DNA from: Isurus oxyrinchus
Lineage: Eukaryota
DNA length: 64,000 nucleotides
NCBI GenBank assembly: GCA_026770705.1
Contig: JANJGN010000342.1
Location: 310,001 to 374,000 of the forward strand
Direction: 5' to 3'
Shown here: piece after piece, positions 7,864 to 37,394 of the stretch
How the letters are laid out: each line of letters starts with the position of its first letter
How positions within the stretch are numbered: position 1 is the first letter of the stretch
Notes under the pieces: model-generated
The model's input: the letters and a program-made list of their open reading frames with translations, nothing else
Told to the model about the DNA's origin: nothing
The model's database searches: none
Program-made: the position numbers and the translations under genes

Positions 7864-7945
7864 GTAGTTGTGGGCGAGTGGTTAAGACGGTGGATTTGAA
7901 ATCCAGTGGGTTCTCCTCACGCAGGTTGGAAACCTGTCAACTCCG
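7864..7945 (+). pseudogene. tRNA-Ser(TGA) pseudogene
   Basis: gtagttgtgggcgagtggttaag...ttgaaatcca...gcaggttggaaacctgtcaactccg. T-loop/B-box mutated. Confidence 0.85.
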
Positions 7946-13984: not shown

Positions 13985-14575
13985 GAGCCCGGGTCTGTCA
14001 CTGGGAGGAAGCTGCGGCCTCGCTCGGAGCAAACGGCAGGAGGCTCCCCTGGGGACCGGGAAGTCCTTTTCCAGGTTTTTTACTGACACAACATGTTTAC
14101 GGAGCCTCCCCGGTCCACCCGCCGGATCCATCGCTCCCTCCGCCTCGCCGGTCACTCCCTTTCCCATTGAGGACCCGACAAAGGAGCATCTCCCCATCAC
14201 ACTTCGCATGCTTCACTCCCAGCCCCGCCCCTCATTCACTCCGATTGGCTGGAGGACCAGCCGCTCAGGTTCTGTCCTCCAGTCACACCCCCTCATCCTA
14301 TCAGCCGGGCATTGTGAGCTGTCAGGTGAGAGGTCATTGCCGGGGGGCGGGGTTTACAAATCCCAAGTGCGGCCCCAGAGCCTAATCTTATCCAATGAAC
14401 ATTCTCCACTCTCACTGTCCGCCGCTTTCGGCTTCTCTCCGGTACCAACCTCAAGTAAAGAGAACAGGAGACTCCGAGCATGCGCAATCCACCCGGACAA
14501 CGCGCGGCAGATAGGGCGGTTTCTGCGGCGCATGGGGCTGTGGGTAATCCGGCCGCCATTAGGGACCAAGTCTCA
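13985..14575. promoter_or_regulatory. CpG-rich, probably bidirectional promoter between divergent ZNF units
   Basis: High CpG density, GC boxes (ccccgcccc ~14223, ggggcgggg ~14344), CCAAT boxes (gattggct ~14243, ccaat ~14392), NRF1-like gcatgcgca ~14478, YY1-like ccgccatt ~14553. Confidence 0.65.
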
Positions 14576-14584
14576 GTTAATCTT

Positions 14585-14703
14585 TAGATAAAAGCAAAAT
14601 ACTGTGGATGCTGGAAATCTGAAACAAAAACAGAAAAAGTGGTTCTCTCTCCACAGATTCTGCCAGACCTGCTGGGTTTTTCCAGTATTTTCTGTTTTTT
14701 GTC
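14585..14703. mobile_element. Short collapsed palindromic remnant of Penelope-type terminal repeat
   Basis: ggatgctggaaatctgaaacaaaaacagaaa ... tgccagacctgctgggtttttccagtattttctgtttttgt is homologous to the PLE ends at 27095, 30770 and 60917. Confidence 0.65.
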
Positions 14704-15484
14704 ATAGTTAATCTTTATTTGGGGAAGGGAGGGGGATATTCTGTTAGCAAATGGATGGAGAATTCGAAAGATCATCTGCTACCATTTGTACCAAGTGATA
14801 ATATAGTTATGGGATATTTATGAGGAGGTTTAGAGTTAGAGACAATTCAGAGAAGGTTCACTCGGTTCATTACTGGGATTTTTAAAATTCATTCATGGGA
14901 TGTGCGCTTTTCTGGCTGGGCTGGACTAATTAATTATTATATATATATAATATAATAATTATTATAGGTGCAGACCCTTAATAAGAAACTAACAGTCCCG
15001 CGTTTGCAGCGAACAGACCGGCAATGTCTGGGTTTCTTCCCTGCTCGGCCGGGGGAAATGATTATGCAGAAGGGTGCATGCCCGGTGATTTGGTCCAGGA
15101 GATAGGAGGAGAGAAGTTTGTGCATTTCTTTCCTGGACTGACAGGGATGGATTTTGGAAACTCCTTTTACAGGGGGTTAGAAGGGGAGGATTTACACATA
15201 GCATACTCAAACCAAGAGAAATGTTTGTCTCTTCTCAATTTCCGTCGTGGGCTGACAGTGATGTATTTTTTATATAATCTGATTTTTACAGGATATTAAG
15301 TGAGAAGGATTTGCAGATAGGAAACTCAAACCAAGATCTGACAGAGTTACTTAATTCATCGGAACTTGGAGATTGTTGGCCTGTAAGTGTAAGCATTGAG
15401 TTCCTGGACATTACCACTCGCTGTGTAAAATTTATTCCTCACATCCCCATTGCAGATCTTGCCCCAAATCTTAAATCTGTGTTC

Positions 15485-27000: not shown

Positions 27001-27158
27001 TGAATCTTCCCAACTCACCTGCCAGCCGTCTCTCTGTTCACGGTTTTAATTTCGGCTCTGGATCTGCACTCGTTCTTTCTAAACTCCGCATTTTAAAACA
27101 AAAACAGAATTACCTGGAAAAACTCAGCAGGTCTGGCAGCATCGGCGGAGAAGAAAAG

Positions 27159-27197
27159 AGTTGACGTTTCGAGTCCTCATGACCCTTCGACAGAACT
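27159..27197 (-). ncRNA. Minimal hammerhead-ribozyme-like motif (variant core CUGUCGA)
   Basis: AGUU-CUGUCGA-A-GGGUC-AUGAG-GACUC-GAAA-CGUC-AACU: stems I and II pair, with GAAA and a GUC site. Confidence 0.6.
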
Positions 27198-27664
27198 TGA
27201 TTTCGAGTCCAAGAAAGAGTTGAAATATAAGCTGGTTTAAGGTGTGTGTGTGGGGGGGCGGAGAGATAGGGAGAGAGAGAGGTGCTTGTGTAGACAAACA
27301 AGCAGTGATAGAAGCAGATCATCAAAAGATGTCAGCGACAATGGTACAAAAGAACACATAGGTGTTAAAGTTAAAGTTGGTGATATTATCTAAACGAATG
27401 TGCTAATTAAGAATGGATGGTAGGACACTCAAGGTACAGCTCTAGTGGGGGTGGGGGAGCATAAAAGATTTTAAAATATTTAAAAATGGAAATAGGTGGG
27501 AAAAAGAAAAATCTATATAATTTATAGCGAAAAAAAAGGGAAAAAGGGGATTTCCAGCATCCGCAGTTTTCTGTGTTTTTATCTCTGTGTTTAATTGACT
27601 GCCACTGCTCTCCAAGAAATGCCTACCTCCTTGAAGAAGTTCTGTTCCTCTCTGCGCACCTTCT

Positions 27665-30259
27665 TTGCTTTCCATTTCCTTCCTGGTGTTTGACAAGGTG
27701 TTTACTAAAACCTGCTTTCACAGCCATATCTCCTTTCTCAGTGACTGTCTCCGTCTCCGACTTACCCCACGTGGATTTCAACTGAAATTCCACCCCTCAT
27801 CTTTCGAACCCACCCAGGATTACCGGTATCTCCGGAACATAAAACGTTTCTCAGACTGCTGTTCCCGTCACATTCTGAAATCCACACTCAGTGCCATGCG
27901 CCGCCATATGAACACACTCGACCTCTCCCTCCAGCAGCACCGCCGTACCCTTTTTCAAAGCTGCGCGTGCCCCCAGTTTCATTTTATCCTCCGGCTCATC
28001 CGACGCCTCAACAAGAAACATTTTCTCTTTCTCTCAACTGCTAAGGAACGCAAGCTCCAACAACTCATCGACACCAACACCCATCTAGGACCCTCCACCC
28101 CAGCCTGTCCCTCCGTCCCCACCCCATCTTCCAATCCCAGCCCCAGCCGTGTATTCACTATACCCCCTGACCTTCCCCTCTCCGATGCTGAACGTTCAGT
28201 GCTCAGCAAAGGACTTAGTTTCATACCCTTACGCCCTCACCTCAATGAATTTCGGGCTCGGCATGATACTGAACTCTTCTTTCGCCGTCTTCGTCTCCGG
28301 GCTCACTTCTTCGGGCAGGAGTCCTCTCCCAATTCAACGGATCCTTTTACCCATCTCCAATATTCTCCCTCCACCTGGACCCCTCCCTCTGGATTCTTAC
28401 CTTCTCTTGATCTTTTCATTGAGAACTGTCGGCGCGACATTAGTCGTCTCAATTTCTCTGCTCCTCTCACCCATTCTAACCTGTCTCTCTCTGAACTTAC
28501 TGCACTCCATTCTCTCAGGTCCAACCCCGACATTGTCATCAAACCCGCTGACAAGGGTGGTGCTGTTGTTGTCTGGCGCACTGACCTCTACCTCGCGGAG
28601 GCTGAGCGTCAACTCGCAGACACTTCCTCCTATCTGTCCCTGGACCATGACCCCACCACTGAACATCAAGCCATTGTTTCCAGGACTGTCACTGACCTCA
28701 TCTCCTCTGGGGATCTCCCTCCCACAGCTTCCAACCTGATAGTCGCCCAACCTCGGACGGCCCGCTTCTATCTCCTACCCAAAATCCACAAACAGAACTG
28801 CCCCGGTAGACCGATCGTCTCAGCTTGCTCCTGCCCCACAGAACTCATCTCTCGTTATCTTGACTCCCTTCTCTCTCCCCTTGTCCAGTCCCTTCCCACC
28901 TACATCCGTGATTCCTCTGACACCTTACGTCACATCAACAATTTCCAGTTCCCTGGCTCCAACCGCTTCCTCTTCACCTTGGACGTCCAATCCCTCTACA
29001 CCTCCATCCCCCACCAGGATGTTCTGAGGGCCCTTAGCTTCTTCCTCGAACAGAGGCCCGAACAATCCCCATCCCCACTACTCTCCTCCGTCTGGCTGAA
29101 CTTGTTCTCACGTTGAACAATTTCTCCTGCAACTCCTCTCACTTTCTCCAAATCCTACTCCGGCCCCCTTCCACAAATTTTTCTCCGGTACATCGATGAT
29201 TACTTCGGTGCCGCTTCATGCTCTCGTCGGGACTTGGAAAAATTTATTAATTTTGCTTCCAATCTCCACCCCTCCATCATTTTCACGTGGTCCATCTCTG
29301 ACACTTCCCTTCCCTTCCTTGACCTCTCTGTCTCAATCTCTGGTGATAGACTGTCCACCAATATCCATTACAAACCTACCGACTCCCACAGCTACCTCGA
29401 CTACAGCTCCTCACACCCCGCTTCCTGTAAGGACTCCATCCCATTCTCCCAGTTCCTTCGCCTTCGTCGCATCTGTTCCGATGATGCTACCTTCAAAAAC
29501 GGTTCCTCTGACATGTCCTCCTTCTTCCTTAACCGAGGTTTTCCACCCACGGTCGTTGACAGGGCCTTCAGCCGTGTCCGGCCCATCTCCCGCGCATCCG
29601 CCCTCACGTCTTCTCCTCCCTCCCAGAAACATGATAGGGTCCCCCTTGTCCTCACTTATCACCCCACCAGCCTTCGCATTCAAAGGATCATCCTCCGCCA
29701 TTTCCGCCAACTCCAGCATGATGCCACCACCAAACACATCTTCCCTTCACCCCCCTTATCGGCATTCCGTAGGGATCGCTCCCTCCGGGACACCCTGGTC
29801 CACTCCTCCATCACCCCCTACTCCTCAACCCCCTCCTATGGCACCACCCCATGCCCACGCAAAAGATGTAACACCTGCCCCTTCACTTCCTCTCTCCTCA
29901 CCGTCCAAGGGCCCAAACATTCCTTTCAAGTGAAGCAGCATTTCACTTGCATTTCCCCCAACTTAGTCTACTGCATTCGTTGCTCCCAATGTAGTCTCCT
30001 CTACATTGGAGAGACCAAACGTAAACTGGGCGACCGCTTTGCAGAACACCTGTGGTCTGTCCGCAAGAATGATCCAAACCTCCCTGTCGCTTGCCATTTT
30101 AACACTCCACCCTGCTCTCTTGCCCACATGTCTGTCCTTGGCTTGCTGCATTGTTCCAGTGAAGCCCAACGCAAACTGGAGGAACAACACCTCATCTTCC
30201 GACTAGGCACCTTACAGCCTTCCGGTCTGAATATTGAGTTCAACAACTTTAGGTCATGA
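27665..30259 (+). pseudogene. Penelope-like RT/GIY-YIG endonuclease polyprotein, disrupted
   Basis: Motifs DIVIKPADKGGAVVV, FYLLPKIHK, GRPIVS, DVQSLYTSIP, RYIDD, LPFLD, NLVYCIRC...YIGET. Compared with the 53.8-56.8 kb copies it has a 1-nt deletion near 29075 and an ~83-nt deletion near 29153 removing GVAMG. Confidence 0.92.
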
Positions 30260-30670
30260 GCTCCCTCCCCCATCCCCACCCCCTTTCTGTTTCCCCCTTT
30301 TTCCTTTTTTTTTCCCTAATTATATAGATTTTTCTTTTCCCACCTATTTCCATTATTTTTAAATATTTTAAAATCTTTTATGCTCCCCCCACCCCCACTA
30401 GAGCTGTACCTTGAGTGCCCTACCATCCATTCTTAATTAGCACATTCGTTTAGATAATATCACCAACTTTAACTTTAACACCTATGTGTTCTTTTGTACC
30501 ATTGTCACTGACATCTTTTGATGATCTGCTTCTATCACGGCTTGTTTGTCTACACAAGCACCTCTGTTTCTCTCTCTCTCTCTCCGCCCCCCCCCCCCCC
30601 CCCCCCCCCCCCCCCCACACACACACCTTAAACCAGCTTATATTTCAACTCTTTCTTGGACTCGAAATCA

Positions 30671-30709
30671 AGTTCTGTCGAAGGGTCATGAGGACTCAAA
30701 ACGTCAACT
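30671..30709 (+). ncRNA. Hammerhead-like motif, GAAA mutated to AAAA (likely inactive)
   Basis: agttctgtcgaagggtcatgaggactcaaaacgtcaact. Confidence 0.5.
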
Positions 30710-31512
30710 CTTTTCTTCTCCGCCGATGCTGCCAGACCTGCTGAGTTTTTCCAGGTAATTCTGTTTTTGTTATGGAAATAGTTGGTTGGTTTTTATTTCA
30801 TTTAACTGATCATTAATTCCGAAGGCAGGGGTTGATCCGGGCTGTGTCACGGGAAAGAGAGGAATGAGGATCAGGAGGAGGCCATTCAGCCCTTTGACCC
30901 CGCTCCGCCATTCAGTAAGATCATGGCTGATCTGATTGTGGTCTCGGGGCCACTTTGCTGTCTCTCCTCAATATTTGGAAAATATTGTCAGTTAGCAGCG
31001 GGAAAATGGAGAAGGAACCAAAACAAAAACCCCAGTGTCCAGCTTTGTGAATCTTTAGAAACTCTTTGGGAACCGGAATCCGAGGAGCAATGAAGGGTGA
31101 TCAGTTCGACTGACCAGAGACATTCAAGGAAACTTTCCCTTCTTTAAGACGCTGGAAACATTAACTTTGATGTTGACAGTGAAGTTATCTGACCTGAGAG
31201 ATTGAAATGATTCTCGTTACTGCACATCAGGAATTCACACCTAACATCGGCTTCAGGACAATCAGAATACTTGGTAACAGACAAAACGCCGAAAGGCTCG
31301 AAGGGAGACGGCACCTGTTGTCAGAGAGCTGGTTCCCGGTGACATGGATGTGCCTGGAGTGGGTGGAATCAGACTGTTTCCATGTATCCACAGTGAATGT
31401 CCCTCCCTTGAGAAAAAATGAAGAGAATAATTGTCCTCCCGGTAGCAGCAATCTGAAGCTTAAACTCGCTGACACCCTGGGTTAGGAAAGCTGGCACATC
31501 AGCCTTACGTCA

Positions 31513-33942: not shown

Positions 33943-34014
33943 TTTCCTGACCGGGAATGGAACCCGGGCCGCGGCGGTGAAAGCACCGAATCCTAACCAC
34001 TAGACCACCTGGCA
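33943..34014 (-). tRNA. tRNA-Glu(TTC), probably non-functional
   Basis: Minus strand tgccaggtggtctagtggttaggattcggtgctttcaccgccgcggcccgggttccattcccggtcaggaaa. Acceptor-stem mismatches and a T-loop G>C change. Confidence 0.85.
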
Positions 34015-37312: not shown

Positions 37313-37394
37313 GTAGTCGTGGCCGAGTGGTTAAGGATATGGACTTGAAATCCATTGGGGTTACCTCGCGCAGGTTCAAATCCTGTCGACTACG
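37313..37394 (+). tRNA. tRNA-Ser(TGA), best-preserved copy
   Basis: gtagtcgtggccgagtggttaaggatatggacttgaaatccattgggg...gcgcaggttcaaatcctgtcgactacg, followed directly by a TTTT Pol III terminator. A few substitutions. Confidence 0.88.

What the first reader, a model, noticed from the sequence alone, without database searches (positions are those of the whole stretch)
27095..30771. Fixed inversion breakpoint implies a tandem or circular RNA template for this Penelope family
Seen: the left arm begins with the reverse complement of ...ttctgtttttgtttt, and the body begins with ggatttccagcatccgcag (27548). In the other copy these two strings are directly contiguous (57297-57330). Copy 1 is therefore a precise flip of an upstream direct pseudo-LTR, and the element's tail runs into its own head. 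The left arm of copy 2 (53339) starts within 2-3 nt of the same point, and the right end of copy 1 stops there too. Inference: the T-rich tract ~60 nt downstream of the hammerhead motif is a defined priming site on a head-to-tail or circular template.
Basis: partly seen in the sequence, partly recalled or inferred. Interest (0 to 1): 0.8.

Follow-up and report, generated by a model that had tools for sequence, protein, structure and literature searches.

The report
Ordinary Penelope-like insertions with fixed ends
Two shark Penelope-like retrotransposon copies, and two tiny relatives nearby, always end at one of two fixed points about 33 bases apart, which is the already published signature of how this class of mobile element starts copying its RNA.

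Summary
Copy 1 (27095-30771) is an inverted 453-nt partial copy joined to a unit-length body. The body starts with the same letters that follow the 3' end in copy 2 (57311-57342/3).

I found two more mini-insertions of related subfamilies (14587-14705; about 60913-61112). Of the 8 outer ends, 5 stop at the T-rich end "E" within about 3 nt, and 3 run 32-34 nt further into a copy of the head (the "tail"), on one arm only. Contigs of public runs show the same E ends and E-to-head joints across the genome.

- Two adjacent internal start sites for reverse transcription, separated by the tail, on pLTR-ORF junction RNA, with both DNA strands cut and extended, were shown in vitro for an Anolis Poseidon element (PMC11167929).
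- The inverted truncated copy plus a one-sided 30-40 bp tail is the standard drawing of these elements (PMC8557442).
- A circular template was proposed in 2014 (PMC4209133). Nothing here tests it.

Only the outer ends are fixed; the inner (inversion) junctions differ in all 4 insertions. The data require only about 33 nt of head after E in the template, not a full tandem or a circle.

This scan had already called copy 2, and similar insertions elsewhere in this genome, textbook cases.

The parts
27095..27547 (-). Copy 1 left arm: an inverted, 5'-truncated partial copy (reverse complement of 30294-30771). Its outer end is the element's 3' end E.
27548..30771 (+). Copy 1 unit-length arm, from head (H1) to 3' end E. 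It carries the RT and GIY-YIG reading frame, which is broken by a private 82-nt deletion at 29153/29154 and by stops in the head region.
   Evidence: (loose end at 29153)
27548..27581 (+). Head H1-34: the same letters as the 'tail' that follows E in copy 2.
30675..30705 (+). Minimal hammerhead-like motif (CUGUCGA box, helix II, GAAAC-GUC). This copy has A for G at 30698. The predicted cut is at 30705/30706.
   Evidence: table 3 (30698 A>G in most contig depth)
27163..27193 (-). The same hammerhead-like motif in the inverted arm, with 0 mismatches.
30757..30771 (+). Terminal T-rich tract E (start site 1). The copy 1 right end stops at ...gtttttgtt.
   Evidence: loose ends at 30771
53325..53338 (.). 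Left copy of the 14-nt target-site duplication of copy 2.
53339..55503 (-). Copy 2 left arm: inverted and 5'-truncated, ending outward at E without a tail. It holds a 604-aa frame with RVT_1 and a weak GIY-YIG match.
55512..57310 (+). Copy 2 right arm, 5'-truncated, running to E.
57311..57342 (+). Copy 2 tail: 32-33 nt identical in kind to the head (start site 2 at its end).
57343..57356 (.). Right copy of the 14-nt target-site duplication of copy 2.
14587..14705 (.). Fragment A: a 119-nt tails-out mini-insertion of a related subfamily. The left arm is 14587-14637 (34-nt tail plus 17 nt of E, inverted). The right arm is 14638-14705 and ends at E. The 12-nt target duplication is at 14575-14586 and 14706-14717.
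60913..61112 (-). Fragment B: a tails-out mini-insertion of about 200 nt of a related subfamily. The right arm carries a hammerhead motif with a CUGAAGA box, then E, then a head-like tail. The left arm is about 66 nt and ends at E. No target duplication was found, so the ends are approximate.

Best explanation
These are ordinary insertions of a shark Penelope-like element (RT followed by a C-terminal GIY-YIG endonuclease), made by target-primed reverse transcription on both strands of a staggered cut.

On each strand the RT starts at one of two fixed places on the RNA: the end of the T-rich tract E, or 32-34 nt further on, at the end of a second T-rich run. Between the two sites lies a conserved 19-nt core that is also the first sequence of the element's body. 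The template RNA therefore carries at least the first ~33 nt of a head after its 3' region.

The two cDNAs grow toward each other, stop at variable places and are joined. This gives a 'tails-out' inverted pair inside one target duplication. Copy 1 is the case where one cDNA reached the unit's start and the other stopped after 478 nt.

Shown here: the anatomy, the fixed outer ends, the variable inner ends, and the target duplications for 2 of 4 insertions. Taken from the literature and inferred for this element: internal initiation and cutting plus extension of both strands.
For: Termini:
- 8 of 8 outer ends fall at E (5) or at E plus 32-34 nt (3). The tail is on one arm only in 3 of 4 insertions and absent in 1.
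- One target duplication encloses the whole inverted pair in copy 2 (14 nt) and in fragment A (12 nt), with 0 of 2000 shuffles each.
- The arms of one insertion are the most alike pair for copy 1: 98.0%, against 92.1-96.7% for the cross-copy pairs. The copy 2 arms are 96.4% alike.
- The head core is 18/18 identical in 3 instances and 17/18 in the fourth. The neighbouring E regions of the mini-insertions are only 82-86% like copy 1.

Genome-wide:
- Loose ends behind 30771 with varied flanks: X1 324 contigs (agreement 0.39), X20 16.
- Loose ends behind 30776 that read on into the head: X1 251, X17 29, X20 8.
- Table 5c lists 8 go-back joints 30770/1 to 27548-50 in X1 and 3 in X17.
- Depth rises from 0.39M at the head to about 6M at the 3' end of the ORF, as 5' truncation predicts.

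Domains: RVT_1 at E 2.4e-08; GIY-YIG at 2.9e-4 and 6.5e-4 in two copies.

Literature:
- PMC11167929 (main text): two adjacent internal RT start sites that bracket the tail, and both strands cut and extended.
- PMC8557442 (passages): an inverted 5'-truncated copy and a one-sided 30-40 bp tail are typical.
Against: - No target duplication was found for copy 1 or fragment B, so a single event is not proven for them.
- The in vitro work was done on a Poseidon element of Anolis, where the start sites lie inside the ORF and the site is called an AC-rich stem-loop. Here the sites lie in non-coding sequence (all three frames across E-to-head have stops) and the RNA strand is U-rich.
- The E-to-head stretch folds no better than shuffles (z -0.47 and -0.55).
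- One search shows only the best supported rows (2238 loose ends and 392 joints are not shown) and rests on contigs, which cannot give frequencies.
- Only 4 insertions could be read base by base.
Confidence: 0.8

Rival explanations
1. The template is a circular RNA (cut by the hammerhead and ligated) or a long multi-unit tandem RNA, and the T-rich tract is the priming site on it.
For: E is followed by the head in 3 insertions and in many contigs. A hammerhead-like motif lies 66-68 nt upstream of E in all 4 large arms. A circular template was proposed in PMC4209133 (Discussion passage), and rolling-circle mobilisation is discussed for PLE-derived retrozymes (10.64898/2026.07.22.740005, abstract and passages).
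Against: Each tail stops after 32-34 nt and is followed by target DNA, so only that much head is needed in the template. No direct repeat was found around either large copy (0 families in each of the two stretches scanned). A joined form that stands in DNA cannot prove an RNA circle. In the Anolis element, ribozyme mutants did not change insertion in vitro, and no reads began or ended at the cut site. The core here has U at position 6, and Rfam found no hammerhead.
Confidence: 0.08
2. The fixed ends are fixed 3' ends of the RNA (for example termination or processing at the two T-rich runs), and reverse transcription simply starts at the physical 3' end, as in R2 or LINE elements.
For: Both end points sit at the end of a run of T's. 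Genomic data alone cannot tell a fixed RNA end from a fixed internal start.
Against: For the related Anolis element, the main product did not change in size when the RNA 3' end was moved, and NGS mapped the starts inside the RNA. The body holds other T runs that do not appear as ends among the 8 termini.
Confidence: 0.1
3. Copy 1 arose as a direct pseudo-LTR that was later flipped by a DNA inversion, or as two separate neighbouring insertions.
For: The final order of letters is the same as a flipped direct pLTR, and no target duplication ties the two arms together.
Against: An inversion would need breaks exactly at the element's left edge and at the E/head border. Copy 2 and fragment A show the same tails-out layout inside a single target duplication, with other inner junctions. 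The copy 1 arms are 98.0% alike, the closest of the six arm pairs.
Confidence: 0.05

Closest known systems
PAc, the Poseidon element of Anolis carolinensis, studied in vitro (Frangieh et al. 2024, PMC11167929; main text read)
   Same: There are two adjacent start points for cDNA, separated by the 30-40 nt 'tail', on RNA that spans the pLTR/body junction. Genomic ends fall on these points. Both DNA strands are used. A hammerhead motif lies a short way upstream.
   Different: In PAc the ribozyme and the start sites lie inside the start of the ORF (111-118 nt into it). Here they lie in non-coding sequence, 66-68 and about 100 nt after the predicted ribozyme cut. The shark protein has a C-x4-C-xx-C linker before the endonuclease, which the passages of PMC8557442 say Penelope/Poseidon lacks. 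Nothing was tested biochemically here.
Canonical insertion layout of Penelope-like elements (Craig et al. 2021, PMC8557442, text and Fig. 2 legend seen as passages; it cites Evgen'ev and Arkhipova 2005 and Arkhipova 2006, which I did not read)
   Same: Heavy 5' truncation; an inverted 5'-truncated copy at the 5' side forming inverted repeats around the unit; a 30-40 bp tail, often at one end only; target duplications of variable length.
   Different: In this window none of the 4 insertions has a direct pseudo-LTR; all 4 are tails-out inverted pairs. Two are only about 120-200 nt long.
Circular-RNA and retrozyme models for hammerhead-bearing retroelements (Cervera and de la Pena 2014, PMC4209133, passages; Li et al. 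2026 preprint, abstract and passages)
   Same: A minimal hammerhead without helix III in the repeat; the idea that a more-than-unit or circular RNA explains head-to-tail junctions.
   Different: No tandem DNA array was found around either large copy, and there is no evidence of circles. The tail is a fixed 32-34 nt, not a further unit.
Twin priming of human L1 (recalled from memory, Ostertag and Kazazian 2001; not looked up)
   Same: Both strands of the target prime cDNA synthesis, giving an inverted pair within one target duplication and variable inner junctions.
   Different: In L1 this is a minority outcome and both primings rest on the poly(A) end. Here it is 4 of 4 insertions, and the starts are at two sequence-defined sites.

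Membership tests
Penelope-like elements, canonical EN+ type (RT followed by C-terminal GIY-YIG) | Reverse transcriptase domain | tested here: met
   RVT_1 at E 2.4e-08, 34.4 bits, above the 29.6 cut-off, in the copy 2 left-arm frame. A DKG motif can be read in the copy 1 translation. Relatives carry PF00078.
Penelope-like elements, canonical EN+ type (RT followed by C-terminal GIY-YIG) | GIY-YIG endonuclease C-terminal to the RT | tested here: met
   GIY-YIG matched in two copies at the C-terminal side (E 6.5e-4 and 2.9e-4; 20.4 and 21.5 bits, just under the 22.6 cut-off). Several relatives carry PF01541. The match is weak by score, but consistent in position and order.
Penelope-like elements, canonical EN+ type (RT followed by C-terminal GIY-YIG) | Partial upstream copy (pseudo-LTR), direct or inverted | tested here: met
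   Inverted partial copies in 4 of 4 insertions. No direct repeat was found around either large copy.
Penelope-like elements, canonical EN+ type (RT followed by C-terminal GIY-YIG) | 30-40 bp tail equal to the start of the body, often at one end only | tested here: met
   Tails of 32-34 nt on one arm in 3 of 4 insertions.
Penelope-like elements, canonical EN+ type (RT followed by C-terminal GIY-YIG) | Hammerhead ribozyme motif in the repeat | tested here: inconclusive
   The core boxes and a 5-bp helix II are readable in 4 arms. Helix II differs on both sides in fragment B (GAAUC/GAUUC against GGGUC/GACUC). However, Rfam gives no hit, position 6 of the core is U, and the free-energy fold of copy 2 does not give the hammerhead. 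No cleavage test was done.
Penelope/Poseidon clade | No CX2-5CxxC linker between RT and EN (per PMC8557442 passages) | tested here: not met
   C-x4-C-xx-C can be read just before the GIY-YIG region in the copy 1 translation. This points to the Neptune/Nematis type. No tree was built, so the clade is not settled.
Non-LTR retrozymes / circular hammerhead RNAs | Tandem DNA repeats each holding a type I hammerhead; circular RNA | tested here: not met
   No direct repeat families around either large copy. The fragment regions were not scanned for repeats. Circular RNA cannot be tested with contigs.

The most novel reading that the evidence does not exclude
The inner ends of the arms may record 5' ends of the template RNA, and both arms of one insertion may be copied from a single longer-than-unit RNA.

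One RT would start at the downstream E/head site and run to the head. The other would start at the upstream E/head site and run off the RNA's 5' end. Arms of about 66 nt (fragment A right arm, fragment B left arm) begin within about 6 nt after the predicted hammerhead cut. They would then be fossils of ribozyme-cut leaders, which would be evidence that the ribozyme cuts template RNA in vivo. The 478-nt arm of copy 1 would mark a transcription start.

This would give the hammerhead a visible role that the Anolis in vitro work did not find.
Probability: 0.15. Interest if true: 0.55.

Novelty: already known. Interest (0 to 1): 0.15.

Why it matters
It matters little for mechanism. The rule that these elements start cDNA at two fixed neighbouring sites, which leaves an optional 30-40 nt tail, and the tails-out inverted layout are both in print.

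The modest value is threefold. First, it is an independent genomic confirmation in a cartilaginous fish. Second, the element's endonuclease linker points to a clade other than the one tested in vitro. Third, it gives exact boundaries that help annotate this very abundant repeat: the last 110 nt before E reach a summed contig depth of 19.5M in X1, against 0.2-6.3M in the other bins.

Tried and rejected
Rfam found no hammerhead, either at gathering thresholds on the whole window or at E up to 10 on 30250-30850. It found only three tRNA hits elsewhere and chance matches.

I looked for a special RNA structure at the E/head junction. The folds of copy 2 (57196-57343) and fragment B (60912-61040) are no more stable than shuffles (z -0.47 and -0.55; 57 of 200 shuffles fold at least as well in each). 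They also differ from each other, so I dropped the idea of a conserved stem-loop.

RNAcofold of the ribozyme region did not return the hammerhead fold for copy 2.

To obtain more copies I tried four routes:
- The metagenome scan for the 18-nt head core gave 112 loci. In a BLAST against the copy 1 body and the copy 2 E-head stretch, 11 of the 112 gave matches, all only 20-25 nt long. These are chance matches.
- Raw reads of X21 (organism C) laid only 15 reads, all partial.
- A look-up of the copy 1 junction in the scan's notes by sequence was blank.

A search for target duplications of 6 nt or more around copy 1 and fragment B found none.

I could not measure how often an inverted arm abuts the head elsewhere in the genome. 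One search lists only 15 of 407 joints, and none of the 3 opposite-strand joints shown is at 27548.

Supplementary files of PMC11167929 (Figs S1-S2, Table S1, which show genomic and RNA-seq ends on the start sites) were not opened and may bear on the comparison.
Full report
**What is there**

The window holds two large insertions of one Penelope-like element family.

Copy 1 runs from 27095 to 30771:
- Its left 453 nt (27097-27549) are the reverse complement of its own last 478 nt (30294-30771).
- From 27548 a body runs in the forward direction to 30771.

Copy 2 runs from 53339 to 57342:
- The inverted arm is 53339-55503.
- The forward arm is 55512-57310.
- A further 32-33 nt (57311-57342/3) match the first 34 nt of the copy 1 body at 94%.
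- A 14-nt target duplication (53325-53338 and 57343-57356) encloses the whole of copy 2. No shuffle out of 2000 gave a shared word that long.

The protein frames carry a reverse transcriptase (RVT_1, E 2.4e-08) followed by a weak but repeated GIY-YIG match. The nearest named proteins come from sharks: Chiloscyllium punctatum 65-69%, Heterodontus francisci 77%, Stegostoma tigrinum 67%.

Both copies are broken:
- Copy 1 has a private 82-nt deletion at 29153/29154. Other copies read on there (loose end).
- Copy 1 has stops near the start of its frame.
- Copy 1 has an A for G in the GAAA box of its right-hand ribozyme motif. Most contig depth has G at that place (table 3).

**Checking the observation**

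Fragment A (14587-14705) is a 119-nt tails-out pair inside a 12-nt target duplication.

Fragment B (about 60913-61112, minus strand) is a tails-out pair of about 200 nt.

They belong to related subfamilies, with E regions 82-86% like copy 1.

I aligned all 8 outer ends:
- Five stop at the T-rich tract E within about 3 nt: both ends of copy 1, the copy 2 left end, the fragment A right end and the fragment B left end.
- Three run on for 32-34 nt through the conserved core into a second T-rich run and stop there: the copy 2 right end, the fragment A left end and the fragment B right end. The fragment B end point is approximate.
- No insertion has a tail on both arms.

The 18-nt core occurs 4 times in the window against 0.01 expected. 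It is identical in three places and differs by one letter in the fourth.

A possible fifth, old fragment at 39785-39829 also loses similarity at the T-rich end. It is too weak to count.

**The rest of the genome**

I laid contigs of three runs and raw reads of one run on 27548-30850 (runs chosen).

In X1 (DNA, probably the source species), summed contig depth rises from 0.39M at the head to about 6M near the end of the ORF. It reaches 19.5M in the last 110 nt before E. This fits heavy 5' truncation and a large population of very short arms.

The best supported loose ends at the 3' side are:
- Behind 30771: 324 contigs in X1 and 16 in X20, with poorly agreeing continuations (0.39 and 0.44), as expected of many different flanks.
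- Behind 30776: 251 contigs in X1, 29 in X17 and 8 in X20, with continuations that read the head core.

Table 5c lists 8 go-back joints from 30770/30771 to 27548-27550 in X1 and 3 in X17, with 2-4 (once 13) letters between.

The limits of this evidence are as follows. These are contigs, not reads. Only the best supported rows are printed (2238 loose ends, 392 joints and 218 rows of table 5c are not shown). X1 had so much laid that some differences were not counted. X21 laid only 15 partial reads.

The result therefore shows that E ends and E-to-head junctions are common. It does not give their frequencies, and it does not show how far the head continues after E.

**What it means**

The outer ends are fixed; the inner ends are not.

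The inner junctions are:
- Copy 1: 30294-equivalent against the head.
- Copy 2: 28637-equivalent against 29034-equivalent.
- Fragment A: 17 nt before E against about 68 nt before E.
- Fragment B: about 66 nt against about 135 nt before E.

The three opposite-strand joints printed (28655/30279, 29315/29769, 29783/30202) are scattered as well.

So 'fixed inversion breakpoint' describes copy 1 alone. In copy 1 one arm happens to be unit-length.

The tails-out layout inside a single target duplication means that both strands of a staggered cut primed cDNA synthesis from the 3' region of the RNA, and that the two cDNAs were then joined. In copy 1 they share 2 nt at the joint.

The arms of copy 1 are 98.0% alike, the closest of the six arm pairs. 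Those of copy 2 are 96.4% alike. This fits one event per insertion, although copy 1 and fragment B lack a detectable target duplication.

**Comparison with what is known**

Frangieh et al. 2024 (PMC11167929; outline and whole main text read) purified the protein of a Poseidon element of Anolis and reported the following:
- It cuts and extends both strands.
- Reverse transcription starts inside the RNA at two adjacent sites.
- The optional 30-40 bp 'tail' of genomic copies is the sequence between these two sites.
- Genomic ends fall on these sites.
- Ribozyme mutants do not change insertion in vitro.
- No RNA-seq reads begin or end at the ribozyme cut.

Craig et al. 2021 (PMC8557442; passages) describe the inverted 5'-truncated copy and the one-sided tail as typical of these elements.

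Cervera and de la Pena 2014 (PMC4209133; passages) found minimal hammerheads in the repeats. They proposed that cut and ligated circular RNAs could be templates for more-than-unit reverse transcription.

A 2026 preprint (10.64898/2026.07.22.740005; abstract and passages) derives animal retrozymes from the repeats of these elements.

Its well-supported half (defined start sites on RNA that carries a head after the 3' region) has been shown experimentally in another clade.

**Differences from the published case**

- The two sites here lie in non-coding sequence. All three frames across the E-to-head stretch of copy 2 have stops.
- The sites lie 66-68 nt and about 100 nt after the predicted ribozyme cut.
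- The RNA strand there is U-rich.
- The stretch has no fold that stands out from shuffles.
- The protein has a C-x4-C-xx-C linker before the endonuclease. The passages of PMC8557442 assign this linker to Neptune and Nematis and say it is absent from Penelope/Poseidon. I built no tree, so the clade is a lean, not a result.
- The ribozyme motif has U at core position 6 in all four large arms. Fragment B has the usual A there, and its helix II is changed on both sides. Rfam does not recognise the motif.

**Tandem or circle?**

The data do not require either. Each tail ends after 32-34 nt and is followed by target DNA. A master copy that itself bears a tail would supply the needed RNA. No direct repeat was found around either large copy (0 families in each of the two stretches scanned). 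Junctions seen in RNA-type runs also stand in DNA runs, so they say nothing about circles.

**A lead that I could not close**

Two short arms, the fragment A right arm and the fragment B left arm, begin within about 6 nt after the predicted ribozyme cut. Notes of this scan report the same for other windows (unchecked).

If such arms are run-off cDNAs on ribozyme-cut RNA, they would be evidence of cleavage in vivo. They would also show use of the start sites at the upstream repeat/body junction of a longer-than-unit RNA.

Against this, the depth in X1 is already 17.4M at 30698, upstream of the cut (table 3). Most of the abundant short arms therefore include the 3' half of the ribozyme.

**Verdict**

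Interest is low. This scan had already judged copy 2 and similar insertions elsewhere in this genome to be the standard structure.

Noticed in passing
window 14638-14705 and about 61046-61112: Two short arms (68 and about 66 nt) begin within about 6 nt after the predicted hammerhead cut. The fragment B right arm begins a few nt before the CUGAAGA box. They may be run-off cDNAs on ribozyme-cut RNA, or chance.
   Followed up: partly
window 30656-30766: The last 110 nt before E have a summed contig depth of 19.5M in X1, against 0.2-6.3M in the other bins (390k against 0.3k-71k in X17). This points to a very large population of short arms or non-autonomous relatives that share only this end.
   Followed up: partly
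window 30675-30705, 27163-27193, 53404-53434, 57212-57242; fragment B about 61047-61017: The hammerhead-like core has U at position 6 (CUGUCGA) in all four large arms. Fragment B has CUGAAGA, and its helix II is changed on both sides. Copy 1's right motif alone has A for G at 30698.
   Followed up: partly
window 39785-39829: A possible fifth, old fragment of the same 3' region (76% over 46 nt). Its similarity also stops at the T-rich end.
   Followed up: no
run X20: An RNA-Seq run labelled coral metagenome holds 42% of the sampled words of this shark element and shows the same E ends and E-head continuation. The label and the content do not fit, and this is unexplained.
   Followed up: no
window 7864-7945, 33943-34014, 37313-37394: Three tRNA matches above Rfam's gathering score. 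Two are 82 nt long with a long extra arm.
   Followed up: no
window 29153/29154: An 82-nt deletion private to copy 1. Contigs of three runs and both arms of copy 2 read on there.
   Followed up: yes
Relatives at 41-49% protein identity over most of the query come from corals, sea anemones, echinoderms and a tick, so the family is widespread in marine invertebrates.
   Followed up: no
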